Part shown: in pieces, positions 4,015 through 55,988 of the stretch
Position numbering within the stretch: position 1 is the first letter of the stretch
Layout: each line of letters opens with the position of its first letter
Virus record (IMG/VR): IMGVR_UViG_3300046517_002304
Span: 310,001-374,000 of that record
DNA length: 64,000 nucleotides
Strand: one strand, 5' to 3'
Translations under genes and position numbers: made by a program
The notes under the pieces: generated by a model
What the model was told of the DNA's origin: nothing
The model's input: the letters and a program-made list of their open reading frames with translations, nothing else
Database searches by the model: none

Positions 4015-4677
4015 TCATGCAAGCTCAGGATGGTTTTTGTATAGTTCATCCTTGATCTTGGCTAATTCCGTCATTGAAATTTCGTTTGGAAATCTTCCTA
4101 AGACATAACCATCGAAATAATACCGATACTCTGCCTTAGCTTTCATGCCATCGCTAAATACATAACATCCATTAGATTCAGGAAGCAGAACAGATGTTTC
4201 GGCCGGACCATCTGTTCTATGTCGGTTATCTTTATAATACCAACCCTCATGATACGTCCAACAAGAATTAGCAATGTAAGCAGGACCACCGACACGATGC
4301 CGTTGATTAAATTGATACCATTCTTTTGTCCCATTGGGATGGGTTATGGCAGGAAGATCATTATCTCTATGTAAGAGTCCATTTTGATACCACTCTTGAG
4401 TAATTTCATCTTTATATCTTGTAATAACTGCCGGTAAATCATTTTCACTATGCAATTCACCATTAGCATTGAACCACGACTCTTCAATCGCAGAACATCC
4501 CGCATCTTTTATAGTATGACACACATAACCATTTTTGGTTCCGATAACATCTTTTCCGTGTTTAAAATAAACAATTTTATCATCTATCCTTATATCTGCG
4601 AAAAGCTTCGGAAACGAAATCAGGCTTGCCGGAATTAAAGAAGACAATCCAGTGAGAATTTGACGACGATTAAGCAT
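4015..4677 (-). CDS. HRxDGPA-repeat protein with twin-arginine-like N-terminus
   Basis: MLNRRQIL...; LHSENDLPA, LHRDNDLPA, HRVGGPA, HRTDGPA repeats. Confidence 0.75.
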   Translation of the reverse strand: MLNRRQILTGLSSLIPASLISFPKLFADIRIDDKIVYFKHGKDVIGTKNGYVCHTIKDAGCSAIEESWFNANGELHSENDLPAVITRYKDEITQEWYQNGLLHRDNDLPAITHPNGTKEWYQFNQRHRVGGPAYIANSCWTYHEGWYYKDNRHRTDGPAETSVLLPESNGCYVFSDGMKAKAEYRYYFDGYVLGRFPNEISMTELAKIKDELYKNHPELA

Positions 4678-4941
4678 GCTTCTTTCCTCTTTTCATTCTC
4701 CAAGGCTTGTTACCTTGTTCGTTGTTTAATACTTGATGCCCGAAAGGTTTGTTTTCGTCAACAGAGTTAAGATTATAACCACCAGCAAGTGACTCAGCAG
4801 CCTTTAAGGCTATGACTTCGCTACAATAACGCCCTTCACGATCATGCACACCTTCACTGCTAACGGCATATGCATGGTAAATGAATCCATCTGGATCGTT
4901 TGTGCGAATTAATACTTTACCTTTCCACATCAGTTTTTTCC

Positions 4942-5388
4942 TTATGCCAATTCAGGGACATCCATATGACCGACTGCTTCATAGAAAGCAAAAGACCTTC
5001 TGGCGTACCCTATAAAGTGCGGAGGGCTGCGATACCTACTCACGCTATTTGTAATGAATGATTTTTTCGCACCAAACGGCTCAGCTTTTTTAAATAATTT
5101 TCTGCCGATACCCTTACGCCGATGTCTAGTTTTAACATAGACGCCGATATCCAATGCATCGTGGTTATAGAAGTTTCCCAACAGCAAAGCCCCTACTGGG
5201 ATATTACCAATAAACGCCATGGCAATAAAAGATATTCTCTTTCGATCATAGACATGTATTTGATCTAAGGCAAGCGACTTCATCATACCTTGCTTATAAT
5301 ATAATTTGTGTCTTAAAATCAACTTGCAAAAATCTTGAATTTCTTTTTTAGAATTGCGGATTGTAATAATTTTAAGCATATCGGACAC
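4942..5388 (-). CDS. GNAT family N-acetyltransferase
   Basis: Motif A VYVKTRHRRKGIGRKL; C-terminal AFYEAVG. Confidence 0.75.
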   Translation of the reverse strand: MSDMLKIITIRNSKKEIQDFCKLILRHKLYYKQGMMKSLALDQIHVYDRKRISFIAMAFIGNIPVGALLLGNFYNHDALDIGVYVKTRHRRKGIGRKLFKKAEPFGAKKSFITNSVSRYRSPPHFIGYARRSFAFYEAVGHMDVPELA

Positions 5389-10325: not shown

Positions 10326-10661
10326 TTAAGAAATTCCACAAGCATTTAGAAGAAGTTTACGAAGCTCAATCATATTTGATTCGTGGTGTATACCAGATGA
10401 CATCCATTTATTATCGGCGGCATTTGCTATCGCAGATATTAGAACATCGGGAATACCTAATCTTTCACCAACGGACTGGTATGAGCTACATGGCCGATCT
10501 TTCAAGGCAGTTATCGGACAACAACTGCCTCCTTCTTGGAGCGAATTTCTAATAGGGGCCAATTCAGGAAAGGCTACGCCCCCCCATTTCAGGGACGACA
10601 CTCTGACATGCCAATTCCTTTTAGTCTTTCTTAAAGCGGCAATGAATTGTTTAAGATTCAT
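10326..10661 (-). CDS. MNLKQFIA paralogue family, copy 1
   Basis: MNLKQFIA...CPIT...AADN...ELRKLLLNACG. Confidence 0.7.
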   Translation of the reverse strand: MNLKQFIAALRKTKRNWHVRVSSLKWGGVAFPELAPIRNSLQEGGSCCPITALKDRPCSSYQSVGERLGIPDVLISAIANAADNKWMSSGIHHESNMIELRKLLLNACGIS

Positions 10662-11152
10662 ATCGCCGCTCCCGCATACATTGCCGCCGGATTTTTCAGG
10701 AAGTCTTTCATCCTAGCAACAACCATTTGTCTTGTAATAGGTCTTTTAGCATACATTCTTACGCCGAATAAATATTCAACGTCTTCATAGCTTAATTTTA
10801 AAATTTTTGCCAGTGTATACTTGGCTGTTTTCCACGTATCAGGATAAGGAAGATCAGTATTACGAGGCGAAGCGTTAATAGCTTCGTCAAAAGTCATACC
10901 GATTGGAATAACGAATGGCTGGCTCTGAGTAGGATGTGATTCATATTTACATAGATCAGGAAACGCTATAGGCAAATGTCCTCCAACGCACCCAGTTGTG
11001 CCACAACCTTCAGGATTTAACAAATCGCAAAAAGGATCATGTGTTCCACGGTAAGGAACACTCAGCACATAATTCATATCAAAGTGCTTGTCAAGAATTA
11101 TATTCTCAACAAAGCGAATGAGTTGTTTGAATCTGGTCTTATGCATTTTCAT
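10658..11152 (-). CDS. Hypothetical protein with CGTxxCxxGHLP motif (paralogue of 17688-18254)
   Basis: CGTTGCVGGHLPIAFP versus CGTQACAVGHLPLVFP. Confidence 0.65.
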   Translation of the reverse strand: MKMHKTRFKQLIRFVENIILDKHFDMNYVLSVPYRGTHDPFCDLLNPEGCGTTGCVGGHLPIAFPDLCKYESHPTQSQPFVIPIGMTFDEAINASPRNTDLPYPDTWKTAKYTLAKILKLSYEDVEYLFGVRMYAKRPITRQMVVARMKDFLKNPAAMYAGAAI

Positions 11153-11435
11153 TTACTCCACAGGCATCTAGTAAAAGTTTACGGAGTTCAAACATGTTGC
11201 TAGTATGATGACACTCCAATACCATATTGTCAGCAGCGTGAACAATCGCTGTGATTAATACGTTTGGCAATCCAACGGAAATGCCGACTTCATCAAATTG
11301 CTGGCAGTCCGCACCCTGTAGTGATGTAATCGGACAAGAAAAATTATCATCGTCTCTAAGAATACTTTTAACTTTAGAAACATGCCAATGCTTATTGGCA
11401 TTCTTAAGTTCGGCAATGAATTGTTTGAGGTTCAT
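11139..11435 (-). CDS. MNLKQFIA paralogue family, copy 2
   Basis: MNLKQFIA...CPIT...AADN...ELRKLLLDACG. Confidence 0.7.
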   Translation of the reverse strand: MNLKQFIAELKNANKHWHVSKVKSILRDDDNFSCPITSLQGADCQQFDEVGISVGLPNVLITAIVHAADNMVLECHHTSNMFELRKLLLDACGVNENA

Positions 11436-11445
11436 GATTTATTTC

Positions 11446-12165: not shown

Positions 12166-12354
12166 CTAGGACTTGATGGCTTTATTGACTTCGCTGACAG
12201 TCGTCTTGACTTCGTCTTCAACGCCGCTCAGTCCCTTCTTGAATTGGACAAAGCTGCTGCCGACGCTGCGGGCGATTCCTGGAAGCTTGTTCCCGAACAG
12301 AACTGTCCCGACCAAAAGCACCAGTCCGATTTCCATGTAAGAAATTCCGAAAAT
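12166..12354 (-). CDS. tatA: Twin-arginine translocase subunit TatA (missed by ORF track)
   Basis: (M)FGISYMEIGLVLLVGTVLFGNKLPGIARSVGSSFVQFKKGL...: single TM helix, FG hinge, KLP, amphipathic helix, FKKG. Start at ATT 12354 or ATG 12336. Confidence 0.85.
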   Translation of the reverse strand: MFGISYMEIGLVLLVGTVLFGNKLPGIARSVGSSFVQFKKGLSGVEDEVKTTVSEVNKAIKS

Positions 12355-12416: not shown

Positions 12417-12950
12417 CTAAAGTTTTGAACCAGAAATCATAAACGCAATCGGTAAAGTAAATCTTTTTTTACCGATATCAAGTTTAATTTCCTCGCCTAA
12501 TAAACCATCAATCCATTTCTCATTAAATTGCTGTTCGCTGACAAAAGTGTTTATATCATTTCCCATATAAGAATTTATCACATGATAAAGATCATGGTCA
12601 ACTCCTACAAGATTCATTGCGTGTATACTTAGTTTGCCACACTTATTGCGCTTGGCCACATCACTTTGTTCCGCACCTAAAATAATACAAGTATAATTCT
12701 TAAGCAAATACTTTTTTAAGCTGGCGATTGTTTTTAAGCCATCAATCACAATTACATCATGTTCAATAAACATTGCATTAACAGCGCTATAAAGCTGGCG
12801 AAACTCACGGCTTTCAACTTGACCGCCCATTGCATTTTGGATGCGGTCTATATCTATCGATTTCTCCATACATGCCGCAGCATTATAAATTGCAGTAGGT
12901 ACGCATTCGTATTCTCTACAAGTAGAGCGAATTGTTATATCGGTTCGCAT
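12417..12950 (-). CDS. Putative papain-like (C39-like) cysteine peptidase
   Basis: ECVPTAIYNA (Cys at helix start), HAMNLVG, INS. Confidence 0.4.
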   Translation of the reverse strand: MRTDITIRSTCREYECVPTAIYNAAACMEKSIDIDRIQNAMGGQVESREFRQLYSAVNAMFIEHDVIVIDGLKTIASLKKYLLKNYTCIILGAEQSDVAKRNKCGKLSIHAMNLVGVDHDLYHVINSYMGNDINTFVSEQQFNEKWIDGLLGEEIKLDIGKKRFTLPIAFMISGSKL

Positions 12951-13189: not shown

Positions 13190-13756
13190 TCATGACTTAA
13201 AGAACTCAACCAGCGAAGCTTTAACGAATTCATCATTACTTACTTGAACTCCATTAATCCAATATTCTTCTGTACGAGTCCTGGAATCAGGGAGATATAT
13301 TTTTGCAGGTCCGTTAAGGCGATGAAGTTTCCCATTCTGCCACCATGCCGTAAGGCTTTTTGTTTCTACGGCAGGACCACCTATACGGTGAGGTCTTCCA
13401 TGCTGGTACCATTTTTTTTGGAGGATTTCTCCGTCAAGACTCTCTATAAAGGCAGGAGCGCCTGCACAATGCACGCTTCCCGTATCGTCGTAATGTGTTT
13501 CATGAATAAAATCACAGGAATTTCTTATTACTCGCTTCGGCTCACCATTTGAATAAAACCAAGCTTCTTTAAATCTAGTTTTTTTATAAACAACTAGCCC
13601 ATCACAGACCCCGTAAACATTGCCATTTAATTTCCCATACACAATTTCTTCCTTTTTAACTTCTGGTTCAGGGATAACTACCGCTTTAACTTCATTCTTG
13701 CCGAAGAATGAAAGCAAGCCAACGGGAAAAATGCTAAGGAAATTTCTACGCTGCAT
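13190..13756 (-). CDS. Tat-signal HRxDGPA-repeat protein
   Basis: Likely start MQRRNFLSIFPVGLLSFFGKNEVKA; HRIGGPA, LHRLNGPA. Confidence 0.75.
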   Translation of the reverse strand: MQRRNFLSIFPVGLLSFFGKNEVKAVVIPEPEVKKEEIVYGKLNGNVYGVCDGLVVYKKTRFKEAWFYSNGEPKRVIRNSCDFIHETHYDDTGSVHCAGAPAFIESLDGEILQKKWYQHGRPHRIGGPAVETKSLTAWWQNGKLHRLNGPAKIYLPDSRTRTEEYWINGVQVSNDEFVKASLVEFFKS

Positions 13757-14045
13757 TTTTGATTCCCTTAAGACCACAGGCGTCTAAAAGAAGATTGCGA
13801 AGTTCTCTAATGTTCGGATCGTGTTGGCAGTGATTATCGGCCGCTACGACGATTGCCTGTCGTAACTCTTCCGGTATTCCAAGTTTTATACTAATGATAT
13901 ACCAATCACTAAAAGGTTTGTTTTCTAACGATGAAATTGGGCAACAATACTCGTAGTCGCAAGTTCTAATTTTGTTTTCAATTAATGATAATTGCCACTT
14001 TTTATTAGTGGCCTTCAGGGCGGCGATAAATTGTTTGAGGTTCAT
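13746..14045 (-). CDS. MNLKQFIA paralogue family, copy 3
   Basis: Internal Met of ORF 13746..14084 matches the family start. Confidence 0.7.
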   Translation of the reverse strand: MNLKQFIAALKATNKKWQLSLIENKIRTCDYEYCCPISSLENKPFSDWYIISIKLGIPEELRQAIVVAADNHCQHDPNIRELRNLLLDACGLKGIKNAA

Positions 14046-14353
14046 GGTTTTTCGCGTCTCTGAAAATGACCGTTTAAATACCATTCTTTTGTACCGTTTG
14101 CTTGAATTACGGCAGGACCGCCTTTACGGTGAGGCTTACCATGCTTATACCATGCTTGCAAGCCGTCAGAGAAAATTATTGCTGGCCCATCTTCTCTGTG
14201 CAACTCTCCGTCTTCGTCAAACCAGCGTTGAACTCCGTCCTCGTCTACTGAATGAACGATTTTATTTTTTACTTGATGTTCGCTATCCTCAACCGGATGC
14301 TCAAAAGTAAATATCCGAACAGCAAGCAACAAAGAGAAAATGCTCGTTTGCAT
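14042..14353 (-). CDS. HRxDGPA-repeat protein without RR motif
   Basis: LHREDGPA, HRKGGPA; hydrophobic N-terminus. Confidence 0.7.
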   Translation of the reverse strand: MQTSIFSLLLAVRIFTFEHPVEDSEHQVKNKIVHSVDEDGVQRWFDEDGELHREDGPAIIFSDGLQAWYKHGKPHRKGGPAVIQANGTKEWYLNGHFQRREKP

Positions 14354-14380: not shown

Positions 14381-15124
14381 CTAAGTTCTCGGACCAAAGT
14401 CGTGAGGGCTGAACATATGCCCGCCTGGACCGTAATCCAAGAGCAGTTGTTCATTATATCGCCTGAGCTTTACCGCATATGCAAGCGGATCTCTAGTTCC
14501 AGTTGCCAATGGGATTCTGTGGTGAATTTTTATTTTTCCATCTTTATCATTATAAAAAATAATATCACCACTATCACACCTAATCTGCGGAATACTCTCA
14601 GCATATGCAATGCAAGGATTAACAGAATGCTCTGATACTGGAACAGCAGGAAGATTATGAACGGCATTCCACCATTCTTCCCGATCCATACATTGACCAT
14701 TTAAAGCATAATAGCAAGTTTTACCGCTCTTCTGAATAACGGCCGGTCCATCTTCTCTGTGTCTAGCCCCATGCTGATAGTAGTGATGGCTATGAGTGCC
14801 ATCAACACATTTAATTATCATGGCCGGATTGTTGTCTCTATGAATAAGTCCATTTTCATCATACCAGCATTCTATAAGCGCTCCCTTTTTATAACGAACA
14901 ATCCCATCCTTAATGCCGATAGTTTCTTTTTCCCCGACAGAGTAAAAAATTCCATCATGGAAGTAAGATGGACTGTCTGCCATGTCGTCGTTTGGATATG
15001 TTGGGATTGGCTCCTCAGTATAAGAATCATCAGGCGATTCTGAGACAGCCGCAACGATAGGCTTAATTAAGCCAACGCTGGCGAACATTGCGGGGATTGC
15101 AGCAAAGAAATTACGTCGCTTCAT
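14381..15124 (-). CDS. Tat-signal HRxDGPA-repeat protein
   Basis: MKRRNFFAAIPAMFASVG...; IHRDNNPA, HREDGPA. Confidence 0.75.
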   Translation of the reverse strand: MKRRNFFAAIPAMFASVGLIKPIVAAVSESPDDSYTEEPIPTYPNDDMADSPSYFHDGIFYSVGEKETIGIKDGIVRYKKGALIECWYDENGLIHRDNNPAMIIKCVDGTHSHHYYQHGARHREDGPAVIQKSGKTCYYALNGQCMDREEWWNAVHNLPAVPVSEHSVNPCIAYAESIPQIRCDSGDIIFYNDKDGKIKIHHRIPLATGTRDPLAYAVKLRRYNEQLLLDYGPGGHMFSPHDFGPRT

Positions 15125-16377: not shown

Positions 16378-17687
16378 TGTCGCATCTCCTTAAGTAAAAA
16401 AAGTTTTTTTCAATTAGTTAAGGCTTATTGCCTAACTTTCCGAAGTCTTATGGATAACTAAAAATCGTTCGGGCCACTTTAACTGTTGGAGCAATATTTC
16501 CGGCTAGCAGGATCAGCTCTCGTTTCCTTCTGCATACCCCTTGTGAGGGCGTGAATCCATGCAGAGAGATGTGCGTGACGCACCACCGGACGATTGTAGT
16601 TTATCTATCTCGGGTAAAAGCCAATCTAAATAACATTTGCTAATCTGCCTATTGGCGTACCAATACGCGCCTACAAACATAATTGCACCAAGCCAATTTT
16701 CTAAACCAAACCGTTTCTCCACATAATGGCCTATGCATCCTGCTGCAAGAATATTAGCTATAAGCCATTTAACAGCGAAGCGAATAATTAAAAACCATAA
16801 AGCTTTATTCGTGCTTGCACTTGCACTCTTCAAAGATTGTTCGGGTATGTCCATCGGCAGCAAATATCTCCCAAAATTCCTTCGCATTGATGCGTTTGAA
16901 TATGAGCGTTCCTTTATGAAGCTTACTGCCCGAATGCAGAACAGCTTTCTTCAAGTCCTTGGTGTGCTTTTGCTCTTTAGCCCAATTATGCATTATTAGG
17001 ATTGCTCCGTTATAGCAAAAACCCCATCTTTCCATGCCACATTGTCTGTAGGAAACTTACCATAAATCCAATTATTATAAGCCGCATCCCAATCAGGGGA
17101 CTTATTTGTAATAATTATCGTTGGAGTTTCTCCACCGAATTCACTACAGTTTTGTAATTTGATTACTTTGTATGCCATTATACGCTCACCTTTCGGAAAT
17201 CTTCAGGAATCACAGAACCTTCAATCATAGGATCTGAAAGCCATGCGCCTTTGATTGTTTTATAACCAAGCCTAGTGTGCAAAGCATACATTTCCGCATA
17301 ATACTTAAACTGCTCAAACGAATCATAATTTTTCTGAAGGCGGCAACGCCAGCCAGTAATCCCAGATTTGCACTTTACACGTTTCATGATGCTCCCATAT
17401 GGATAACTAAAAACCCCACACCGAAACCAGCATGGGGCCATATGATATGATTGTCGGCCTTATTCATCATCGCCGTCAAGAGTCCATCCGGGCGGCTTCC
17501 ATTCATCGCCTTCAATGCGACCAAACCCACCGGCAAAACCATGCCGACCATTTCCAAAATTGTTATTATTGTTTCTATAATTCTCTGATGTTCTGACTGT
17601 TGCGTCAGCGTAATGATTCATTACGATAGCCGTCAAAATACAGCCGCCGATAAATGCAACAAGAGCAGTTATGATTATTGTCATATA

Positions 17688-31113: not shown

Positions 31114-31719
31114 CTAAGAGTGATATTTTTTAACATATATCGCGGCCTTAATATGTGCTCGCTGTAGTTCAGTTAATTGATGCTGCGTATCAAGAATGGC
31201 CTGTAAATGATCTATATCACAGTCCACCAATCGCTTCCATCGGAAGTGCTCTTTGCCGCTCTTTCCGTAGGTTCCCCACAATTTAAACCCATTTTCATCT
31301 ACGTAAAATCCATCTACAACACGAAAAGGTTGCGCGGAATCATCTTCCTCTATTTCTTTAACTGGCGACTCTATTTTCACGCTAAGATGTTCAGGAAGTT
31401 CTGGAAACTTAATTGGTTGCCAGCAAATAACCGATCCATCTGGAAACGAACCCCATGACGACGAACGCCAGTGCATATTTTCATAACGTCCTTTACGAAC
31501 ATATGGTAAGTCTACATTTTCCGTATTGTGTTTAACAACTATAAAGCACTCTTCTTTATTGTCTGGCAATTCATCCTTGCAATAAATCCAGTCATCATTG
31601 CTAATTTCTGGAATATCCACTTTTACTTTAGGAGTATCGGCATTATTAGCCTTGCAGCCCCCAATAAATGGAAGCAGACCAGCCAACGGAAGCGATGATA
31701 GAAAATTTCTGCGTTTCAT
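31114..31719 (-). CDS. Tat-signal lipoprotein-like protein with DUF551-like domain
   Basis: MKRRNFLSSLPLAGLLPFIGG-C; WIYCKDELP...VICWQPI. Confidence 0.6.
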   Translation of the reverse strand: MKRRNFLSSLPLAGLLPFIGGCKANNADTPKVKVDIPEISNDDWIYCKDELPDNKEECFIVVKHNTENVDLPYVRKGRYENMHWRSSSWGSFPDGSVICWQPIKFPELPEHLSVKIESPVKEIEEDDSAQPFRVVDGFYVDENGFKLWGTYGKSGKEHFRWKRLVDCDIDHLQAILDTQHQLTELQRAHIKAAIYVKKYHS

Positions 31720-38950: not shown

Positions 38951-39328
38951 CTAGTAGAGTTTTAAATGCTTTGTGAACGGGTCAATTTTCTCTGCATAGT
39001 CTGGCCCGATAGCCAAACAAGTTTTTGTAGGAACTCCATGAAATTCAGTCAACCCGCTGTCAGTAATAAGATAAACTTCAATTCCGGCATCCTTTACTTT
39101 CTGATACAACTCTAACATCTCTTGTTCGGAATCTATCTGTAAAACAATTTTGGGGAAATGGTTCTCCAGCCAAAACTTCTGAACATCGGTATAACTGGAC
39201 GTATTATTTTTAAAATCAGAATGCGCTCGGATAAACGCCATTACTGCATGGGACAATTGTGCAAATTCTTTTCCTTTACGTACCTTCAGATCATTACGGA
39301 TAACTATACTTTGTTTTATTTTTGACAT
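38951..39328 (-). CDS. pth2: Peptidyl-tRNA hydrolase, Pth2 family
   Basis: KQSIVIRNDL...KGKEFAQLSHA...KIVL...DSGLTEF...TCLAIGP...HLKLY. Confidence 0.92.
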   Translation of the reverse strand: MSKIKQSIVIRNDLKVRKGKEFAQLSHAVMAFIRAHSDFKNNTSSYTDVQKFWLENHFPKIVLQIDSEQEMLELYQKVKDAGIEVYLITDSGLTEFHGVPTKTCLAIGPDYAEKIDPFTKHLKLY

Positions 39329-42386: not shown

Positions 42387-43103
42387 TTAGTAGTATCCTT
42401 CAATGATATCAATTAAGCCTGCTGCATTATAAATGGGTAAAGAGTGCTTCAGAAAAAACGGCTCTTTATTCGGCCTAACAACCGTCAAATTATGATTTCC
42501 ACTTTTTATTTCATTAAGGAGATTACCAACACACATATCGGCATTAGTAGATTGGATCTGTTTTTCACAAGCTTCAATCAGATACTTCTGCGAAACATCC
42601 GTCAGAAGTTTAAATCCGACAAGCAATGCAAACGGACACCATTTTTTAACCAGCTTAATAATCTTGGTTGTCTTCTTAAGACTTATAATTAACTCCTCTT
42701 CATTGGAGCTAATCTTCCCATTGGATGGAACGGGCGCATAATCACTGACTGCCGCAGCCAGTATGATTACATCTGGTTCGTATTCGCCACAAGAATATCC
42801 TTTAACCTTATCAAAGTAATCGTTGTAGTCTACGTACTCAACACCATCGTATTGCTTAGAATAGCTGTTATAATTCTCAAGCATTTCATATACATTATCT
42901 TCTGCTTCAATTCCTTTTGTAGCATCAATGCGTTTAGAGAATGGAGTATCGGAGCCTTTGGCATAAATGAAAACAACTTCATGGCCAGCTTTCATAGCGG
43001 CCAGAGCAAGGATAGAGCCAAATCGGCCAGTAGAATTGTTGCCGATATGACGCACATCATCAATGGGCGCTTTGGTGCCACCGGAGGTTATGAGAAATTT
43101 CAT
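42387..43103 (-). CDS. coaB: Phosphopantothenate-cysteine ligase
   Basis: LITSGGTKAPIDDVRHIGNNSTGRFG, AAAVSDY, KISS, LVGFKL. Confidence 0.9.
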   Translation of the reverse strand: MKFLITSGGTKAPIDDVRHIGNNSTGRFGSILALAAMKAGHEVVFIYAKGSDTPFSKRIDATKGIEAEDNVYEMLENYNSYSKQYDGVEYVDYNDYFDKVKGYSCGEYEPDVIILAAAVSDYAPVPSNGKISSNEEELIISLKKTTKIIKLVKKWCPFALLVGFKLLTDVSQKYLIEACEKQIQSTNADMCVGNLLNEIKSGNHNLTVVRPNKEPFFLKHSLPIYNAAGLIDIIEGYY

Positions 43104-46063: not shown

Positions 46064-47533
46064 TTACGCCGAAATTTCGGCGTACCTTTCATTGTTAAGA
46101 ACTTCCAGCATAGACTCATACGGAGTCACGGAAATTCCGCCAAGCAAATACTTCAAAATGACTGGCGAACAGCCGCTCACAAGATAAGTTCCACGCTCGT
46201 CCTTCTTCACCGGAACGCCCTTCTCCGGAGTTGCATTCACGTTCCAGAAAACAAGCTTCGGCATTTCATAACCGCTTTGCTCGTACTTCTGCTTAATAAC
46301 TTCAAAATTAGTTTTATCATTATCTCTGCATGCAACATCAAACTGCATGTCGGAAATAATGTAAAGCACATTCGGCATTTGATGCAAAGGAACATTATTC
46401 TCCACCGCAGTAGAGAGAACCACATCAAACACCGCTTGCAGGTTAGTGTTCTGATTCCAGTCAGCACGACGCAAGTTAGCGTCCTTTTCCTTCAACGTCT
46501 TGCCCTTCAACTTCTGCAAAGACGGTCGGTTAGAAAAAGTAATGAAAGCATCCTTGAATGCACCCTGATTGCGCTCCGCAAAGTAGATTGCCAGTGAAGT
46601 GCAAACATCCAAAGGATTTCCGTTCATGCTACCGCTAACGTCAGCGATAACAAGACCATTATGCGGATTATCCTTAAGATAATCAGGAAGCGCCTTCCAC
46701 TGCAACTCTAAGGACCGAGCCTGTTGCTCATCGGAATATCTAATGGCCTTTATAATATCATAAGGATAAAGAGTTCCTGCCTTAATTTCAGCTTCGCCCT
46801 TTTCCACTTTTTCCAAGTATTCGGTATATCTCTCACCGTCATGCTTATGAAATGCCGTTCGGTAAATCATGCTTGCACGACTAGGAACACGCTCATAGTT
46901 AATGGCGTCCCATTTTCCTGCACACATATTCTTCTCAACAATATTAATGCGGGTTCGCAGACCAACCAGCATCTTGCGGTATTCCTTCGCAGAATATCCA
47001 AGGCGATTTGACAGGAAATTCGCCAGTTGAACCGTCTTTTTGCTGCTGGTGTTGTTGGACGGCATCCACTTACCAAGCAACGAAACTTCTCCGCTGCTGG
47101 AAAGGTCGGCATTCAACTGCTTAGAAATAAATTCAAGTACCGCCTGTTCACATGGCGTACCAATCAAACAAAACAAGTCATCCCATCGTCCGAAATGAGG
47201 AATGTGCTTGATGTTTTTAAGAACAGCTTCCTTATGATTATTAGCAAGGAACGTCAAAAGACGACGAACTACATCGCGTTCGCCTTGCCCACCACGAATA
47301 TCGCGGAAGTGAAGCAGACATCGCAATGCTAGAGTATTGTCCTCTGAAAATGCTCTACCGAACAGATGTTCAACACTTTCCCAATTACCTTTTAGGGAAG
47401 AACGACAAGCCGCACCCATCGCATAGAAGTCTAGCAAATCAGACTTCGTAGACTTGAGCGTCTTGGCTCCGTTCGCAGTTTCAGTGGTATTGAGGCTATC
47501 CTCAAGGTTATTTACGAATGTATTTTCGTCCAT
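46064..47533 (-). CDS. DUF2828 family TROVE/Ro60-like protein with C-terminal vWA domain
   Basis: TANGA, RDIRGGQGER, FGRWDDL, GKWMP, INYERVPS, MIDAS DVSGSM, ISDMQFD, VFWNV. Confidence 0.85.
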   Translation of the reverse strand: MDENTFVNNLEDSLNTTETANGAKTLKSTKSDLLDFYAMGAACRSSLKGNWESVEHLFGRAFSEDNTLALRCLLHFRDIRGGQGERDVVRRLLTFLANNHKEAVLKNIKHIPHFGRWDDLFCLIGTPCEQAVLEFISKQLNADLSSSGEVSLLGKWMPSNNTSSKKTVQLANFLSNRLGYSAKEYRKMLVGLRTRINIVEKNMCAGKWDAINYERVPSRASMIYRTAFHKHDGERYTEYLEKVEKGEAEIKAGTLYPYDIIKAIRYSDEQQARSLELQWKALPDYLKDNPHNGLVIADVSGSMNGNPLDVCTSLAIYFAERNQGAFKDAFITFSNRPSLQKLKGKTLKEKDANLRRADWNQNTNLQAVFDVVLSTAVENNVPLHQMPNVLYIISDMQFDVACRDNDKTNFEVIKQKYEQSGYEMPKLVFWNVNATPEKGVPVKKDERGTYLVSGCSPVILKYLLGGISVTPYESMLEVLNNERYAEISA

Positions 47534-47575: not shown

Positions 47576-47974
47576 CTAAGAATGATGAAGGTTGTTAAAT
47601 TCTTCTTCGGTAATGTGCCTTGTAACTGGATAGGCGTTTACGTAAAGTGGTTGCCCAAGAAAATTTTGGTAGTAAGATTTATACCCTATGCCATTATAAT
47701 ACCATCGTTGAACACCGCCACACGCAGAAGAATAAATAGCAGGCAAATCATCATCACAATGAATTTGGCCTTCTTTGTTAAAATAAGTCTTTTCCACCGA
47801 GCATTTTTGCCAAACTACAATTCCATCACGAACGCAATAAGTCATTTCCCCTCTTTTAAACTTAATAAACTTAGATTTCTTGGCAAGAATCTCTGGCTTA
47901 CTTTCCGCCTTTGCAAATGGCAAGAAAGAAAGCAATCCAGCAGGAATGAATGCAAGGAAATTACGTCGCAGCAT
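47576..47974 (-). CDS. Tat-signal HRxDGPA-family protein (single repeat)
   Basis: MLRRNFLAFIPAGLLSFLPFAKA-E; IHCDDDLPA. Confidence 0.7.
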   Translation of the reverse strand: MLRRNFLAFIPAGLLSFLPFAKAESKPEILAKKSKFIKFKRGEMTYCVRDGIVVWQKCSVEKTYFNKEGQIHCDDDLPAIYSSACGGVQRWYYNGIGYKSYYQNFLGQPLYVNAYPVTRHITEEEFNNLHHS

Positions 47975-48041: not shown

Positions 48042-48116
48042 TGGCTGTGGTCAGATTTGAACTGACGATCTCAAGGTTATGGGCCTCGCGGGGACTCCAG
48101 GCTCCCCCACACAGCG
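48042..48116 (-). tRNA. tRNA-Met(CAT), initiator-like, CCA not encoded
   Basis: Acceptor CGCTGTG/CACAGCC (1:72 mismatch), D arm GGGG/CCCC, anticodon arm CGAGG-CCCATAA-CCTTG, T arm GTCAG-TTCAAAT-CTGAC. Confidence 0.9.
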
Positions 48117-48242: not shown

Positions 48243-48815
48243 CTAAATCGGCGGTCCAGAATTAGCGTAATAGTAACTCAAAGCCGCTTGGTAAGTAGTG
48301 CTCGCATCTTGATAGCGGGCCTGAGCCGTATCATAATCTGGTACAGCGGTGACGGTCCATAGGTCGGTGGCATTGTTAAAGTAAATTACTGCATCAGCAT
48401 ACTGAGGAGTATTCGGATACTGCGGAAACCACAGTCCATTACCGGCAATATAATTTCCATCGCCACGTAATTTATAATACTCTCCGAGATCCCAAAAAGT
48501 ATCTCCGGTTTGAAAATATCCGTTGCCACTAGCGATTAAGTTATTATAAGTAGCCTTCATATCATCCGACCATCTAGTCGGGGCCGATGGCAATGCTGCC
48601 TTATCATTCAAGGCGTCTTGCCAGGCATAACCAGCCTCGCCTCTCGCTGCTGCAACTGCCATTGATGCATTATTTGCAGCAGACAATGCCTGAGTTTGGG
48701 CTGTGGTCGGTTGATTCGGTTGCCCGCCACCCGGAGGACCGCCGCCATACTGAGCAAATGCGCTTGTCTGAGCCAACATCAAAACAACAAACGCCATCAG
48801 TTTTGTTTTCATCAT
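48243..48815 (-). CDS. Secreted Ala/Tyr-rich helical protein
   Basis: Likely start MMKTKLMAFVVLMLAQTSAFA-Q (Sec signal, AFA); resembles 48936-49457. Confidence 0.7.
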   Translation of the reverse strand: MMKTKLMAFVVLMLAQTSAFAQYGGGPPGGGQPNQPTTAQTQALSAANNASMAVAAARGEAGYAWQDALNDKAALPSAPTRWSDDMKATYNNLIASGNGYFQTGDTFWDLGEYYKLRGDGNYIAGNGLWFPQYPNTPQYADAVIYFNNATDLWTVTAVPDYDTAQARYQDASTTYQAALSYYYANSGPPI

Positions 48816-49497: not shown

Positions 49498-49526
49498 TTT
49501 ATAACAAAAAAGTAATCGGCTGTCAA
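49498..49526 (-). promoter_or_regulatory. Sigma70-like promoter
   Basis: TTGACA-17 nt-TATAAA with extended TG. Confidence 0.6.
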
Positions 49527-49862: not shown

Positions 49863-50465
49863 TTAAACAAAACCTCGCGCCTTGCACGGTGCAATCAATT
49901 CGCGAAATGATTCAAGATCACACACAAAAAACCTATGACCTTTATAAAACCACTGTGTAAACGCCGGAAACTTATCGTCTTCTATTGCAGGCCCATCTTC
50001 ACGATGTCTGTTGCCATTGAAATACCATTCTCTTACTCCACATGGGTCAACAATCGCTGGCCCATCTTCACGATGACATATGCCATTTTTGAGCCACTCT
50101 TTCCTGCCGTCAGAATGAATAACGGCCGGGCCATTATCTCGGTGGCACACTCCATTTTTAAACCATGAACAATAACCGTCACGCCTCATTATTGCAGGCA
50201 AATCACCGTCTCTGTGAATTTGTCCTTTTTTATTATAAAAAGTAATTTCGCCCCTAACGGTGCTTTCTATGGTCTTATAAACCACTCCATCTACCGCACA
50301 TAAAATTAAATCGCCAAGCATAACTGAATCTGGAATAGCAGAAACAGCATCAAGCGCAACATTCATTTCGCCAAATTCAACGTGAGCATCTTCTGCCTTA
50401 ACCTTAAAAGACAGCATGCCAATCAACGCCGAGGGTATAAAGGAAAGTAGAGTTCTTCTCTTCAT
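49863..50465 (-). CDS. Tat-signal HRxDGPA-repeat protein
   Basis: MKRRTLLSFIPSALIGMLSFKVKA-E; four repeats. Confidence 0.75.
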   Translation of the reverse strand: MKRRTLLSFIPSALIGMLSFKVKAEDAHVEFGEMNVALDAVSAIPDSVMLGDLILCAVDGVVYKTIESTVRGEITFYNKKGQIHRDGDLPAIMRRDGYCSWFKNGVCHRDNGPAVIHSDGRKEWLKNGICHREDGPAIVDPCGVREWYFNGNRHREDGPAIEDDKFPAFTQWFYKGHRFFVCDLESFRELIAPCKARGFV

Positions 50466-50892: not shown

Positions 50893-51519
50893 TTACTTAA
50901 CATCTTGCAAATAACGCTGAGTTTCAGCATCAATTCTTCCTTGTCTTGGAGTATTATCTTTATGATCCCATAACCATTTATGAGCAGGAATTCTAAAATC
51001 ATACTGTTCTTCATTTATTCCATATCCATAAAGATACCATGCCCGCCAGCCGGTTGTTGGGCTTGTAATGGCCGGGCCATCTTCACGATGACGCTCGCCG
51101 TTCTGATACCAAAATTCATCGCCACAGCTATAATAATGAGCGGGTCCACCATCACGATGCCTCTCGCCATTTTTATACCACACAAACTCGCCCCATCCAA
51201 ATTCAATAGCCGGACCATCTTCCCTGTGTCGTATTCCGTTAATAAACCATTCTTTGCTACCTTGCCAACCCTCTACCGCCGGACCATCATTTCTGTGAAG
51301 TTCTCCGGAAGAATTATAGTAACGCTTTGTACCGTAACGGTCAGTGCGACAACCACTCCCCCATCCAGGTGGTATTTCAGAATGAGTTAATTTAATAACG
51401 AAATTATCCGCCTTAGTAATTGATTCCGGCGCAACTTCAGTTGCTTTAGTTTCTTTCACAGAGAAGAAACCGGCAAACAGGCCAGCAGGAATTAATCCAA
51501 GGAAATTTCTACGCTTCAT
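50893..51519 (-). CDS. Tat-signal HRxDGPA-repeat protein
   Basis: MKRRNFLGLIPAGLFAGFFSVKETKA-T; four repeats. Confidence 0.75.
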   Translation of the reverse strand: MKRRNFLGLIPAGLFAGFFSVKETKATEVAPESITKADNFVIKLTHSEIPPGWGSGCRTDRYGTKRYYNSSGELHRNDGPAVEGWQGSKEWFINGIRHREDGPAIEFGWGEFVWYKNGERHRDGGPAHYYSCGDEFWYQNGERHREDGPAITSPTTGWRAWYLYGYGINEEQYDFRIPAHKWLWDHKDNTPRQGRIDAETQRYLQDVK

Positions 51520-52389: not shown

Positions 52390-54219
52390 TATTGTAATTC
52401 CTTTTTAAGGAGTTCGGCAACATCATATAAATCAGGTATTTCCATGCCGTCTTTTACCTGAACCGTATGTACTGCGATATAATAATTAACATTTTGAGTG
52501 TACCAGATATTATGGTCTGGACTTTCAGCTTCCATTAAATGTTCGTCTGATAACTCTACGCCAGTATTCTCTTTAATAAATGCAAAAGCATCTTTTAATT
52601 TAATAAAGAATCTAATGGCATGACCTTCAACCCCGTTGATCGTCCGTGGTGAATACAATGCGCCATAAATATTCATGGTGATTTCGCCTTTACTTCTTTT
52701 GCCTGTACTTCGGCCCAATACATCTGACTATTAGTGCTCCAAGACTTTAGCTCAGAACTACTTGAATTTATATCATACGATGAAATATCAACATCTGTAT
52801 TTTGATTTATAAAATCCAAAGCATCCTGCAAATCTTCAAACAACCCTGTATCCATTGGACCATCATGAATCTGACCATATTGGGCCATAAGAACAATCAT
52901 GGAACACTTTCAAAGTAAGTGGGGTTAATCGGATGATATGAAGTAACCAGTCGTCTTAAGTTTCTTAAAATACGATCTATGTCGGGCTGGGAGCCGCCGG
53001 CTTTTTGTATGTTTGCTCCGATGATATCTGTTATCTGATCGATACTAAAGCCATAACTGTACAAAATCCGGCAGTCGCTCTCAACATTTGCCAAAAAACG
53101 CTTAGTCTTGCGTTCGTCAAGTTTGTTTTTAATCCAAGAAATCATCTATTTATTTCCGTGTTATTGCCAATGCTAGTGCTATGAACACTCCAAGTCCAGC
53201 GCCCCAATATGCCATTCCAAATAAATCGCCAAATACACTAAACATAGAAACACATCCCAGTAAAACTGCTAAATTTACAATTAATTTGTCGTCGTTGCTC
53301 ATTTTAGAAATCCGTAGGGATAGTAGAAATACTTGCTAGCCTATTCTCAATATCTGCTAGTAGATGTTTTTTGAATACCTTAACAATTTGAAGAAAATCA
53401 CTTTTATTAAACTGTTGAGCTACATTAACTTTCTGTCCATGTAGCGTATTTCCATTATTAACAAAATATAAATACCAATACATTGCAGAAGTAGGCTTGT
53501 ATATTTTAAAACTTTTGCACACGCTAGAATACATTGCGCATGCGGTAGACGAAATCTTTGCAGTTTCGTCTACCTCAAACCCAACGCTTTTTAAAAATTC
53601 AATTTCATTTTCCATAAAACCCTTCAATCGTCAAACTTAATAAGGTAATCGCCGGCCTTCAGCTTACCTCTGAAACACAGGTCGTTCAACAAGTCCTCAA
53701 AAATATCACGAACATTATCCATTTCTTCGCCCTTTGCCTGAAGCTCAGCCACAATAGCATCGTCTAATTTCTCTGACGAAACAGACTCCTCTATCATGTT
53801 ATCGTCTTGCATAATCATATATGGAATATTAAAATCTACTCCATAAACTTCTTCAAAAAGTCTGCTCAAATTACAGGCATCGTATCTGATGAGCTTGGCC
53901 ATTTTGGGTTCCTTTATCTTGGGATTAGAGTAATCAGACCGATTAAATCATCAGTAAATTCTAACAAATCAATAATTATTTGTTTAACGATTGGGGAAAA
54001 TTCATTTCTTAAACTGGCAATCGGCAACTCACGCTTGAAATCTCTCATAAGTGCTGCATGTTTAAACCGCAAAACCCATCTATGATAGCTGCCGTCATCC
54101 AACTTCCAAGTATGGATGTTTATATTTTTACATGCTCCACTCTGAAAAGACTCAAATATTCCCTCGGAATTATCAACCATCCCAATTTCTTTTAAATATA
54201 AAATGTCGTCTTCCATGAG

Positions 54220-55041
54220 TCAAACCTTATGCACTTTATTTTCGTATAGGTAGTATACAGGAACTGGGAACTTCTGTCTAGACAGAAATTGATGAATTTC
54301 GTCCAAAGCATACCTGATTGAAATATGGTACAGGAACAAAGCATCAATCCTTTTATTTTTAATAACTTCCATTACACCATCAAAAGACGAATGAACATCG
54401 TATTTGATATCGTTTTTGTTTAAAAACGTACATTCATGGCAGAAAATACCACCGTCATACTCACCGTACTTGTCCAACGGAACCGTATCGCCTGAATACG
54501 TAAGCAATCCATGCTTGTAATCATTCGTAATCGGCGTTCCAGACTGCTTAAGTCTAATGATTTCGTCTACAGGAGCACAGCTATATTCTTCCTTTAACTT
54601 TCTGCGAACCTCGAATAACTGAAATCCAAGCGTAAGCGCGCCTTCAATATGCCTGCCTGGGAAACAATATACATATAGGTTTCTTCCTACTTCAACAACC
54701 TGATGTGCATCTACGGCAATCCACTCAATCTGGAATTGCGTATTATTGATTTCCTGCTCAAGATAAACCTTCATCTTAATAACACCCAAACTGCCCTTGG
54801 GATAAATAATTCTAAGAGGCTTATTGTTGTGGCCCTTACCAAATTCTCTTGCGTGAAAGAAACTTGGAAGACCAGATATATGATCTAAGTGACCATGAGA
54901 CAGCAGAATCGTTTCAACAGCGAAAATGCGTTCTTTAAGATTAAATGCGCACCCTTCGCCGCAATCAAAGAGGATACGGCTTGGCTGATGAAAAAGCCAC
55001 GTAGCATAGCCAGCCAATGAGCAACCTTCAAGATTCAGCAT
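54220..55041 (-). CDS. rnz: RNase Z-like metallo-beta-lactamase fold hydrolase
   Basis: FDCGEG, SHGHLDH, YSGDT, HECTF, HSS, HISIRY. Confidence 0.8.
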   Translation of the reverse strand: MLNLEGCSLAGYATWLFHQPSRILFDCGEGCAFNLKERIFAVETILLSHGHLDHISGLPSFFHAREFGKGHNNKPLRIIYPKGSLGVIKMKVYLEQEINNTQFQIEWIAVDAHQVVEVGRNLYVYCFPGRHIEGALTLGFQLFEVRRKLKEEYSCAPVDEIIRLKQSGTPITNDYKHGLLTYSGDTVPLDKYGEYDGGIFCHECTFLNKNDIKYDVHSSFDGVMEVIKNKRIDALFLYHISIRYALDEIHQFLSRQKFPVPVYYLYENKVHKV

Positions 55042-55988
55042 TTGTTTTTATGGATAACTATTTTGTTAGTTTTTAAATCCATGCTCATTAAGGATGTGCA
55101 TGGACCAACTATTTTCACTTTAGGATTATATACAATGCCTTTGCATTGTGTATATAAAAGCTTATCGTTCTCCCAATATTCCTTAACACCATTACTCCAC
55201 TCTACTGCCGGACCACCCACTCTATGCTGCAATCCATGTTTATGCCATGCCTTATATCCGCCCCTCATAATTACGGCAGGGCCGTCTTCTCGGTGTAAAT
55301 TACCATGAAAATACCATTCTTTCGTTCCATTGGTGTATTCGCAAGCCGGACCGGCTGCTCTATGTGGTTTATTATTAAAATACCAAATATTAGTTCCGTT
55401 TTCTTCCTCAATCGCCGGACCATCCTCACGATGAAGCATTCCGAGCTGCATCCACCTTTTTTGTCCGGATGCATATATTATGGCTGGACCTCCTATCCGA
55501 TGACACTGCCCATGATTCATCCAAGTAGTAGAAGATGGATTGATACGAGCAGGCCCATCTTCCCGATGGTATCTGCCATCTTCATCAAACCAAGACTCTT
55601 CATCATAATGTCCGCTTAACTTAAAATACCTTTTCTTTCCATTTATAAAACCGATTTTAATATCTTGACGACTTGAATCAGAATATTCTACATACTCCAT
55701 ATATTCTTTTTGTTCAGGCAATCCAAGCTTCTCTACATTAATGCCGCAAGTATAGATGAAATTTATAAGTTTATTTCTAAAGAAAGCCGAATCCTTAATA
55801 TCAAACTGTTCTTCGGCAGATTTCATAAACTCTTCATCGCACTCCTGTTTTTGAGTAAAAGCATAAACATTCTTAATATAAGAAATATAAAGCTTATCCT
55901 TCTTCGTGAAAGATTCCTTATCCACTCCTGTAGAAAGGAATGAAAGAAAGCCGGTCGGCAACAGTGAGAGGAAACTTCTTCGTAGCAT
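55035..55988 (-). CDS. Tat-signal HRxDGPA-repeat protein (six repeats)
   Basis: Likely start MLRRSFLSLLPTGFLSFL; HREDGPA/HRIGGPA/HRAAGPA/HRVGGPA. Confidence 0.75.
   Translation of the reverse strand: MLRRSFLSLLPTGFLSFLSTGVDKESFTKKDKLYISYIKNVYAFTQKQECDEEFMKSAEEQFDIKDSAFFRNKLINFIYTCGINVEKLGLPEQKEYMEYVEYSDSSRQDIKIGFINGKKRYFKLSGHYDEESWFDEDGRYHREDGPARINPSSTTWMNHGQCHRIGGPAIIYASGQKRWMQLGMLHREDGPAIEEENGTNIWYFNNKPHRAAGPACEYTNGTKEWYFHGNLHREDGPAVIMRGGYKAWHKHGLQHRVGGPAVEWSNGVKEYWENDKLLYTQCKGIVYNPKVKIVGPCTSLMSMDLKTNKIVIHKNKC

What the first reader, a model, noticed from the sequence alone, without database searches (positions are those of the whole stretch)
4015..55988. Candidate phage export system: TatA plus eight twin-arginine-signal proteins, seven from one repeat family
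Seen: starts at 4677 (NRRQIL), 13756 (RRNFL), 15124 (RRNFF), 47974 (RRNFL), 50465 (RRTLL), 51519 (RRNFL) and 55988 (RRSFL). Each has a hydrophobic stretch with a conserved Pro, often a K-A cleavage-like site, then 1-6 copies of a roughly 22-aa W(Y/F)xxGxxHRxDGPA repeat. 31719 carries the same leader on an unrelated Cys-lipoprotein-like body. A TatA gene lies in the same window. Established: S/T-R-R-x-F-L-K is the Tat consensus, and TatA forms the translocation site for folded proteins. Inference: the phage boosts or redirects the host Tat pathway to send a diversified family of repeat binders to the periplasm, for example for superinfection exclusion or neutralising envelope defences. I know of no description of this pairing. 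Caveat: the h-regions are short.
Basis: partly seen in the sequence, partly recalled or inferred. Interest (0 to 1): 0.85.

Follow-up and report, generated by a model that had tools for sequence, protein, structure and literature searches.

The report
Megaphage TatA plus twin-arginine-leader protein family
A 511-kb soil phage, probably infecting planctomycete bacteria, carries its own copy of the TatA export-pore protein inside a cluster of at least nine genes whose products start with one conserved twin-arginine signal peptide. This looks like a virus supplying both the cargo and part of the machinery for exporting folded proteins, but export has not been tested.

Summary
All eight start sites carry an M-x-R-R-(N/S/T)-F-L leader followed by 15-18 uncharged residues and a signal-peptidase-like site or a lipobox. 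Seven of the proteins belong to one 23-residue repeat family, with 1-6 copies each. A 56-aa gene at 12166-12336 passes Pfam's TatA_B_E threshold.

New facts:
- The window is part of a 511,233-bp IMG/VR phage contig from soil and rhizosphere metagenomes.
- The TatA is planctomycete-type: 38 of 40 closest genome hits are Planctomycetota.
- TatA lies two genes downstream of a leader gene.
- A ninth leader gene lies just right of the window.
- The repeat family is DUF6745/MORN-like and very common in phages and giant viruses, but almost always leaderless. Only relatives of this phage carry the leader.
- RR is invariant in 12 of 12 leaders despite synonymous Arg codon changes and a lysine-rich proteome.
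- The leader is more conserved than the mature bodies (46% against 21%).

Against: Tat-signal HMMs do not hit, the leaders are short (21-28 aa), no TatC or TatB was seen in about 100 kb, and co-occurrence could not be tested in a second genome.

Best reading (about 0.55): Tat-exported phage proteins, with phage TatA topping up the host translocase. Main rival: ordinary Sec signal peptides. The periplasmic function of the cargo is unknown.

The parts
12166..12336 (-). Phage TatA homologue, 56 aa. It has a Glu at the N-terminal end of the transmembrane helix, an 11-residue hydrophobic core, the F-G hinge, an amphipathic helix (LPGIARSVGSSFVQFKKGL) and an acidic VEDE motif.
   Evidence: Pfam TatA_B_E scores 36 bits, above the threshold of 21. 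TIGR01411 scores 33.8, below its cutoff of 53.9. It aligns to solved TatA chains 7b7o and 2l16. It nests in the planctomycete 'LLFGNRLPG' TatA class.
4015..4677 (-). RR-leader protein (MLNRRQIL..., 220 aa) with 3-4 repeats.
   Evidence: It fails the TatP regex because Ile follows RR-x.
13190..13756 (-). RR-leader protein (MQRRNFL..., 188 aa) with 2 repeats and a VKA site. It lies two genes upstream of TatA.
14042..14353 (-). Leaderless paralogue of the repeat family (103 aa, 2 repeats). Its N-terminus is hydrophobic but has no RR.
14381..15124 (-). RR-leader protein (MKRRNFF..., 247 aa) with 2 repeats and a long C-terminal extension.
31114..31719 (-). RR-leader plus lipobox (…LPFIGG|C) on an unrelated, weakly DUF551-like body (201 aa).
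   Evidence: The single-sequence AF2 model was unusable (pLDDT 37).
47576..47974 (-). RR-leader protein (MLRRNFL..., 132 aa) with an AKA|E site and one degenerate repeat.
49863..50465 (-). RR-leader protein (MKRRTLL..., 200 aa) with 4 repeats and a VKA|E site. This is the protein that was modelled.
50893..51519 (-). RR-leader protein (MKRRNFL..., 208 aa) with 4 repeats and a TKA|T site.
55035..55988 (-). RR-leader protein (MLRRSFL..., 317 aa) with 6 repeats.
12417..12950 (-). Neighbour directly upstream of TatA: a C39-like cysteine peptidase fold (177 aa). Whether it belongs to the system is uncertain.
   Evidence: ESM Atlas feature score 0.96 with 183 shared features, and structural TM 0.69 to Peptidase_C39/C39_2 clusters. 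No Pfam or PDB sequence hit.

Best explanation
A soil megaphage that most likely infects a planctomycete has fused one conserved twin-arginine signal peptide onto members of a phage protein family that is normally leaderless. That family is built of MORN-like 23-residue beta-hairpin repeats (DUF6745/MORN_2-like). Once, through a lipobox, the same leader was fused onto a DUF551-like domain. The phage also carries a host-derived tatA gene in the same co-directional gene array.

Proposed working:
1. The repeat proteins fold in the cytoplasm.
2. Their RR-x-F-L motif is read by the host TatC (or TatBC) receptor.
3. Phage TatA adds to or replaces the host TatA pool, which is needed in large excess to form the translocation site. 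This keeps export going in the infected cell.
4. Signal peptidase I cuts after V/A/T-K-A. For the lipobox protein, Lgt and LspA do the processing.
5. A diversified set of repeat binders, plus one lipoprotein, ends up in the periplasm or on the membrane.

Shown: gene structures, leader conservation, TatA family membership and its planctomycete affinity, absence of the leader from the wider family, and physical linkage.

Inferred: Tat dependence, cleavage, TatA acting with host TatC, and everything about what the exported proteins do.
For: 1. Leaders. RR is invariant in 12 of 12 leaders: 8 in the window, plus L140, P0002, P0064 and P0151. F at +2 is present in 10 of the 11 that align without gaps, L at +3 in 9 of 11, and Pro at +7 in 9 of 11. 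Arg codons differ among paralogues (CGT, CGA, CGC, AGA). The window proteome prefers Lys (K/R = 1.55; 116 K against 70 R in the first residues).
2. The leader is more conserved than the bodies: 46% pairwise identity against 21%. This is the reverse of what signal peptides usually show.
3. 7 of 8 match the TatP regex, against 0.06 expected (regex from PMC1182353).
4. The uncharged runs are only moderately hydrophobic: mean KD 1.2-1.8, best 10-residue window 2.1-2.3. The window's own Sec-type signal and membrane segments reach about 3.0. Most leaders have a Lys in the c-region.
5. One leader ends in a lipobox, so the leader is an export signal.
6. The same leader sits on two unrelated bodies.
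7. The wider repeat family lacks it. Only 3 of the 120 best homologues have it (one is the query itself), and 1 of the 150 best of 29,690 profile hits does. None of 16 repeat genes in 6 other IMG/VR phages has it.
8. The leader-bearing relative P0002 comes from a related phage: its contig also holds a 62%-identical homologue of window ORF 17178-17441.
9. TatA keeps every functional motif of its planctomycete relatives and lies 850 bp downstream of leader gene 13756.
10. Both features are rare. There is no TatA hit in 50,697 GenBank phages, and only 2 IMG/VR contigs were found by pattern. The leader pattern was confirmed only in this contig among 2.9 million.
Against: - Pfam TAT_signal and TIGR01409 give no hit on any leader, even at E<=10.
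- The leaders are 21-28 aa with a two-residue n-region. Tat signals average 37 aa (PMC1182353).
- The same paper shows that RR-regex-positive signal peptides are often Sec-dependent: 13 B. subtilis proteins are listed.
- No TatC or TatB was found in the window or in about 38 kb of flanks. The remaining roughly 400 kb of the genome was not read.
- No second genome was available for a co-occurrence test. The other TatA phage (L009) shows no leader genes in 20 kb, and 534 kb around other TatA homologues shows none.
- Paralogy inflates the apparent independence of the 12 leaders.
- No RNA run was listed.
Confidence: 0.55

Rival explanations
1. The leaders are ordinary Sec (SPase I/II) signal peptides. 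K-R-R is simply the positive n-region, conserved because the genes are paralogues. The phage tatA is an unrelated host-derived passenger or serves some other substrate.
For: The leaders are short with a minimal n-region. Tat-signal HMMs are silent. The F/L/I-rich h-region is hydrophobic enough for Sec. Regex-positive but Sec-dependent signal peptides are documented (PMC1182353). From my own knowledge, a c-region 'xKA' also occurs in Sec substrates such as E. coli PhoA.
Against: RR is never replaced by K in 24 positions, although the proteome is Lys-rich and the Arg codons have turned over. The F-L after RR-x is conserved as well. Two rare features sit within 1 kb of each other. From my own knowledge, verified Tat signals with RR at residues 3-5 exist, for example E. 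coli CueO and MdoD.
Confidence: 0.25
2. The TatA homologue is part of a lysis or membrane-permeabilising cassette. It is a small one-helix membrane protein next to a C39-like peptidase that may cut cell wall. It would act as a holin-like pore, or export that enzyme, independently of the RR-leader family.
For: It lies directly downstream of a C39-like peptidase. Some viral C39-like clusters carry pseudomurein-binding repeats. TatA's short helix is known to destabilise membranes (cited in PMC13673990).
Against: The peptidase assignment rests on language-model and fold similarity only, and the peptidase has no RR leader. TatA keeps the Glu and hinge motifs used for TatBC interaction. In the other phage, TatA lies among an exonuclease and a methylase, not lysis genes.
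Confidence: 0.08
3. The conserved N-terminal peptide is a phage-internal targeting or pro-peptide, such as a capsid-targeting sequence removed by the prohead protease. On this reading it is not a membrane export signal.
For: Jumbo phages and T4 have paralogous internal proteins that share short cleaved N-terminal peptides (my own knowledge). Several leaders are followed by Glu.
Against: A 15-18 residue uncharged hydrophobic core after a basic pair, a -3/-1 site and a lipobox variant make up the anatomy of a membrane signal peptide. No consistent protease motif was found.
Confidence: 0.04

Closest known systems
Bacterial twin-arginine signal peptides (consensus S/T-R-R-x-F-L-K; e.g. E. coli CueO and SufI)
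   Same: Invariant RR followed by x-F-L, a moderately hydrophobic h-region, a basic residue in the c-region, and an A-x-A-like site or lipobox. RR very near the N-terminus also occurs in CueO (my own knowledge).
   Different: Shorter than average (21-28 aa against 37 aa). K after F-L is present in only one of nine. The h-region is F/L/I/P-rich rather than Ala/Gly-rich. PF10518 and TIGR01409 do not detect them. Carried by a phage on cofactor-less repeat proteins.
Planctomycetota TatA paralogue of the 'LLFGNRLPGV(M/A)RSLG' class
   Same: About 40-56% identity over the core in most hits (range 33-67%). Same Glu, helix length, F-G hinge, amphipathic helix and acidic motif.
   Different: Phage-borne. 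It starts directly at M-E, without the M-F-G-L-G-P stretch. Its 'ARSVGSSFVQFKKGL' helix is shared only with a second, high-GC phage (L009) and with none of the 65 cellular copies compared.
Phage auxiliary genes that prop up a host machine during infection (e.g. cyanophage psbA)
   Same: A host-derived single subunit of a multi-subunit host machine, carried by a phage.
   Different: Here the machine is a protein translocase, and the phage also encodes a family of presumptive clients next to it. I found no description of this in a 2026 Tat review or in two jumbo-phage reviews. A TatC annotation in a marine virus map appears without comment.
DUF6745 / MORN_2 ('YwqK-family') repeat proteins of phages, giant viruses and bacteria
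   Same: 23-residue W-Y-x-N-G-x-x-H-R-x-D-G-P-A repeat. The predicted beta-hairpin array resembles MORN proteins. Multi-copy in jumbo phage Atu_ph07 and in mimiviruses.
   Different: Those copies have no signal peptide. This lineage adds an RR leader and a conserved pre-repeat hairpin (D-G-x-V-x-Y-K).
Phage-encoded periplasmic or lipoprotein superinfection-exclusion factors (e.g. T5 Llp, Cor)
   Same: Small phage proteins sent to the envelope, one of them with a lipobox.
   Different: No sequence relation was found. They use Sec. A similar function is conjecture only.

Membership tests
TatA/TatE/TatB family (Pfam PF02416) | Scores above Pfam's gathering threshold | tested here: met
   36.0 bits against 21, residues 2-46. 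It is also precomputed as PF02416 in the JGI gene call.
TatA/TatE/TatB family (Pfam PF02416) | Scores above the NCBIfam TIGR01411 (tatAE) cutoff | tested here: not met
   33.8 bits against 53.9. TatB model TIGR01410 scores 20.7 against 56.5.
TatA/TatE/TatB family (Pfam PF02416) | N-terminal polar residue, one short transmembrane helix, F-G hinge, amphipathic helix, acidic motif | tested here: met
   Column-by-column agreement with 65 planctomycete copies and with solved TatA chains.
TatA/TatE/TatB family (Pfam PF02416) | Works with a TatC receptor | not testable with these tools
   No TatC Pfam hit among called genes in the window or about 38 kb of flanks. The rest of the genome and the host were not seen.
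Twin-arginine (Tat) signal peptide | RR within the motif RR.[FGAVML][LITMVF] near the N-terminus | tested here: met
   7 of 8 in the window plus the ninth in L140. 4677 fails. Regex from PMC1182353.
Twin-arginine (Tat) signal peptide | Tripartite n-h-c layout: an uncharged h-region of at least 12-13 residues and a signal-peptidase site | tested here: met
   Uncharged runs are 15-18 residues in the 8 window leaders. In L140 the consensus Lys after F-L interrupts the run, leaving 11 uncharged residues. Sites lie at residues 21-28, or there is a lipobox.
Twin-arginine (Tat) signal peptide | Detected by curated Tat-signal HMMs (PF10518, TIGR01409) | tested here: not met
   No hit at E<=10 on the full proteins or on the 30-aa leaders.
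Twin-arginine (Tat) signal peptide | Export depends on TatC and on the RR pair | not testable with these tools
   Needs reporter fusions. SignalP and TatP are not available here.
MORN_2 / DUF6745 repeat proteins | Pfam model above threshold | tested here: not met
   Best scores are MORN_2 18.6 against 29.6 and DUF6745 17.6 against 27, and only for 14042-14353. Many homologues carry PF20530.
MORN_2 / DUF6745 repeat proteins | Tandem repeat of about 23 residues forming a beta-hairpin array | tested here: met
   Period 23 in 260 of about 370 spacings. AF2 pLDDT is above 90 over the repeats. Foldseek gives MORN4 at prob 0.90 and viral 'MORN repeat' proteins at E 2e-10. The Atlas structure hit is DUF6745/MORN at TM 0.57/0.84.
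Bacterial lipoprotein signal (31719 only) | Lipobox [LVI]-x-[GAS]-C at the end of the h-region | tested here: met
   …L-P-F-I-G-G-C-K at residues 16-23. The rule is applied from memory, and no predictor was run.

The most novel reading that the evidence does not exclude
The phage runs a semi-private export route. Its TatA variant has an amphipathic helix shared only with another phage. Its unusually conserved leader (RR-N-F-L-x-x-I-P-x-G-L-L) may have co-evolved with that TatA, so that phage cargo is exported preferentially through the host TatC while host Tat traffic is displaced. The result would be a diversified arsenal of MORN-like binders in the periplasm of an infected planctomycete.
Probability: 0.12. 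Interest if true: 0.88.

Novelty: new variant of a known kind. Interest (0 to 1): 0.62.

Why it matters
If the leaders are Tat signals, this is the first case I could find of a virus encoding both a component of the folded-protein translocase and a family of clients for it. No phage tat gene is mentioned in a 2026 Tat review or in two jumbo-phage reviews.

It would extend the idea of phage auxiliary genes from metabolism to protein trafficking. It would show how a common cytoplasmic viral repeat family (29,690 clusters) can be redirected to the envelope by adding a leader. It would also give a short, strongly conserved Tat signal and a minimal 56-aa TatA from the poorly studied Planctomycetota for experiment.

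If the leaders turn out to be Sec signals, what remains is a lineage-specific family of secreted phage proteins plus an unexplained phage TatA. That is still of moderate interest.

Tried and rejected
- DNA search of GenBank phages with 12 kb of the window found no match.
- tblastn of TatA against 50,697 phages found no match.
- PHROGs, NCBIfam and PADLOC on the leader proteins gave nothing useful.
- Pfam on ten neighbours found nothing.
- A word-indexed search restricted to the leader (residues 1-40) found only the query itself. A search with the 132-aa paralogue found two hits.
- A leader alignment of ten sequences was too degenerate for a locus scan. The four-sequence version found only this contig.
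- The profile search with leader plus first repeat was swamped by multi-repeat proteins and yielded one extra leader-bearing relative, P0151.
- Contigs of P0002, P0064 and P0151 are too short (1-2.3 kb) to test TatA linkage.
- TatC could not be located next to tatA in the 40 planctomycete loci by motif search, so no TatC query for viral contigs was available.
- The metagenome scan with TatA returned mostly cellular loci without leader or repeat genes.
- Other assemblies of this phage are 99.98-100% identical, so population variation could not be used.
- No RNA run was listed, and read laying was therefore not used.
- The single-sequence AF2 model of the 31719 lipoprotein was unusable (pLDDT 37).
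- The promoter and terminator scan around TatA was no better than shuffles.
- The capsid-targeting-peptide reading was rejected because of the hydrophobic core and the lipobox.

Full report
**What the window is**

The window is contig positions 310,004-374,003 of IMGVR_UViG_3300046517_002304, which is JGI Ga0495630_0000004 and 511,233 bp long. Identical copies occur in several soil and rhizosphere metagenomes.

About 164 mostly small ORFs, all on the - strand, cover 91% of the window. Recognisable genes are typical of huge phages:
- a Ro60-like RNA-binding protein (phrog_850, E 1e-151);
- two RNA ligases and a PTH2;
- a split CoaBC;
- HNH and LAGLIDADG nucleases;
- NAMPT, a phosphoribosyltransferase and NADAR just to the right of the window.

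No GenBank phage is similar at the DNA level.

**Checking the observation**

Most have a Shine-Dalgarno-like motif upstream.

After RR come 15-18 uncharged residues. A -3/-1 site follows at residues 21-28: V/A/T-K-A in four leaders. In 31719 there is a lipobox, I-G-G-C, instead.

Using TatP's published default pattern RR.[FGAVML][LITMVF] (PMC1182353) plus at least 12 uncharged residues, 7 window ORFs qualify. Shuffles give 0.06 on average. 4677 (RRQIL) fails only because of the Ile.

Seven proteins contain 1-6 copies of a 23-residue repeat, consensus WYKNGKLHREDGPAVEYADGTKE. They also share a pre-repeat hairpin, D-G-x-V-x-Y-K.

- a leaderless paralogue at 14042-14353;
- a ninth leader gene about 4 kb right of the window, with the canonical R-R-S-F-L-K (L140:4017-4832).

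No further leader or repeat gene was found in 20 kb to the left, or between 8 and 18 kb to the right.

**The TatA gene**

The 56-aa product of 12166-12336 passes Pfam's TatA_B_E threshold (36 against 21 bits). It falls below NCBIfam's stricter tatAE cutoff (33.8 against 53.9).

A scan of 185,579 species genomes with its conserved motifs returned 40 confirmed loci, and 38 of them are Planctomycetota. Those genomes usually carry two tandem tatA paralogues. The phage copy belongs to the 'LLFGNRLPG' class. In the tree that clade has 82/91 support.

The phage copy keeps these features:
- the Glu at the start of the helix;
- the 11-residue hydrophobic core;
- the F-G hinge;
- the amphipathic helix;
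- a following acidic motif.

It aligns with solved TatA chains. It begins directly at M-E, and no in-frame extension upstream is possible.

A second phage also has a TatA (contigs of 107 and 198.6 kb, high G+C). Its amphipathic helix (ARSVGSSFVQFKKGL) is identical to this one and matches none of the 65 cellular copies. The two group weakly in the tree (63/88).

TatA was not found in 50,697 GenBank phages.

In the window, TatA is the second gene downstream of leader gene 13756 and the fifth downstream of 15124, in one co-directional array.

**Are the leaders export signals, and Tat signals?**

That they are export signals is well supported. They have a basic n-region, an uncharged core, a -3/-1 site and, once, a lipobox.

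For Tat specifically:
- RR is invariant in all 12 leaders known. These are the 8 in the window plus L140, P0002, P0064 and P0151.
- F at +2 is present in 10 of the 11 leaders that align without gaps, L at +3 in 9 of 11 and P at +7 in 9 of 11.
- The Arg codons differ among paralogues (CGT, CGA, CGC, AGA), and the proteome prefers Lys (K/R 1.55). The pair is therefore held by selection on the amino acids, not by recent gene conversion or composition.
- The leader is about twice as conserved as the mature parts (46% against 21%). This is the reverse of what signal peptides usually show (general knowledge).
- The core is only moderately hydrophobic: best 10-residue window 2.1-2.3. The window's own Sec-type signal at 48243-48812 and its membrane segments reach about 3.0. 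Lower hydrophobicity and c-region basic residues are Tat traits (PMC1182353).

Against Tat:
- PF10518 and TIGR01409 do not hit.
- The leaders are 21-28 aa, against a mean of 37 for Tat signals.
- The same paper lists many regex-positive Bacillus signal peptides that are Sec-dependent.

From my own knowledge, verified E. coli Tat substrates such as CueO and MdoD also have RR at residues 3-5, so a short n-region is not disqualifying.

**The leader is an add-on to a common viral family**

The repeat family is enormous: 1,872 hits in the word-indexed search and 29,690 cluster representatives in the profile search.

By structure and by language-model features it is 'DUF6745/MORN repeat variant'. 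It is found mostly in tailed phages and giant viruses, including multiple copies in the 490-kb Agrobacterium phage Atu_ph07 and mimivirus R871.

The AF2 model has mean pLDDT 76.5 and above 90 over the repeats. It resembles MORN proteins: weakly in the PDB (MORN4, prob 0.90, E 0.03) and strongly among viral models.

Leaders are almost absent from the wider family:
- Among the 120 best homologues, only the query itself, P0002 and P0064 have the RR leader. One more, P0021, has a looser S-R-R-D-L-L start.
- Among the 150 best profile hits, only P0151 has it.
- None of the 16 repeat genes in six other IMG/VR phages has it.

P0002's contig also encodes a 62%-identical homologue of window ORF 17178-17441, so it comes from a related phage.

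The exact leader pattern was confirmed nowhere else among 2.9 million IMG/VR contigs.

The leader also sits on an unrelated, weakly DUF551-like body. It therefore behaves as a portable module. However, a positive co-occurrence test in a second genome was not possible, because the relatives' contigs are 1-2.3 kb long.

**Mechanism and rivals**

Best reading (about 0.55): the proteins are folded Tat cargo that uses the host TatC. The phage TatA tops up the subunit needed in greatest excess. The cargo is released into the periplasm or, for 31719, lipid-anchored.

Main rival (about 0.25): these are Sec signal peptides, and TatA has a separate role.

A third possibility (about 0.08) arises from a neighbour I noticed. 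The gene directly upstream of TatA has a C39-like cysteine-peptidase fold (Atlas feature score 0.96, TM 0.69), although it gives no sequence-profile hit. A small membrane protein next to a peptidase recalls a lysis cassette. However, TatA's intact TatBC-interaction motifs, and its non-lysis context in the other phage, argue against this.

A capsid-targeting propeptide is unlikely (about 0.04).

What the exported proteins do is unknown. No defence-related family matches. MORN-type arrays are generally protein or lipid binders, so 'diversified periplasmic binders' is a reasonable but untested label.

**Novelty**

The Tat pathway, Tat signals, MORN-like repeats and phage auxiliary genes are all known. 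The combination of a phage TatA with an expanded family of RR-leader cargo next to it is what I could not find described. I looked in a 2026 review of Tat evolution, in two jumbo-phage reviews and in full-text searches. The only trace was an uncommented TatC label on a marine virus map.

I rate it a new variant of a known kind, of solid but not exceptional interest until Tat dependence is shown.

Noticed in passing
window 12417-12950 (-): The 177-aa protein directly upstream of TatA has a Peptidase_C39-like fold by ESM Atlas features (0.96, 183 shared) and by structure (TM 0.69). Pfam and PDB sequence searches find nothing. It could be a leader-processing or wall-cutting enzyme.
   Followed up: partly
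L009:9989-10198 (+); same phage in L060 and L061 (contig up to 198,636 bp): A second, high-G+C phage carries a TatA whose amphipathic helix is identical to this one and unlike any of the 65 cellular copies compared. This suggests a phage-borne TatA lineage. It lies among exonuclease and DNA methylase genes, and no RR-leader genes occur in the 20 kb read.
   Followed up: partly
L140:4017-4832 (about 3.1-4.0 kb beyond the window's right end): A ninth leader-plus-repeat gene with the canonical R-R-S-F-L-K. It lies next to NAD-salvage genes (NAMPT, a phosphoribosyltransferase; NADAR nearby).
   Followed up: yes
window 48042-48116 (-): tRNA-Met (CAT), 68 nt upstream of the start of leader gene 47974.
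   Followed up: no
window 54220-55041 (-): A metallo-beta-lactamase-fold protein with a weak precomputed Anti-Pycsar Apyc1 hit. It overlaps the 3' end of leader gene 55035-55988. PADLOC gives no hit.
   Followed up: partly
window 10326-10661, 11139-11435, 13746-14084; and 10658-11152, 17688-18254 (-): Two further small paralogue families of unknown function are interleaved with the leader genes and TatA. One starts MNLKQFIAAL.... The other has a C-G-T-x-x-C-x-G-H-L-P motif.
   Followed up: no
window 2811-3629 (-): A Bax-inhibitor-1-like membrane protein (BaxI_1, E 1.8e-62), unusual for a phage. It lies about 400 bp downstream of leader gene 4015-4677, with two small ORFs between.
   Followed up: no
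window 46064-47533, 35396-36151, 56160-57059, 38951-39328 (-): An RNA-repair-like set: a Ro60-like DUF2828/DUF7788 protein, two RNA ligases and a PTH2 peptidyl-tRNA hydrolase.
   Followed up: no
window 41314-42384 and 42387-43103 (-): A split CoaBC. The flavoprotein (CoaC) half carries a C-terminal region with a weak Peptidase_M23 match.
   Followed up: no
window 48243-48812 (-) and 299-556 (-): One clear Sec-type signal peptide (MMKTKLMAFVVLMLAQTSAFAQ) on a 189-aa protein. Also a small membrane protein with S-R-R followed by a long hydrophobic anchor.
   Followed up: no
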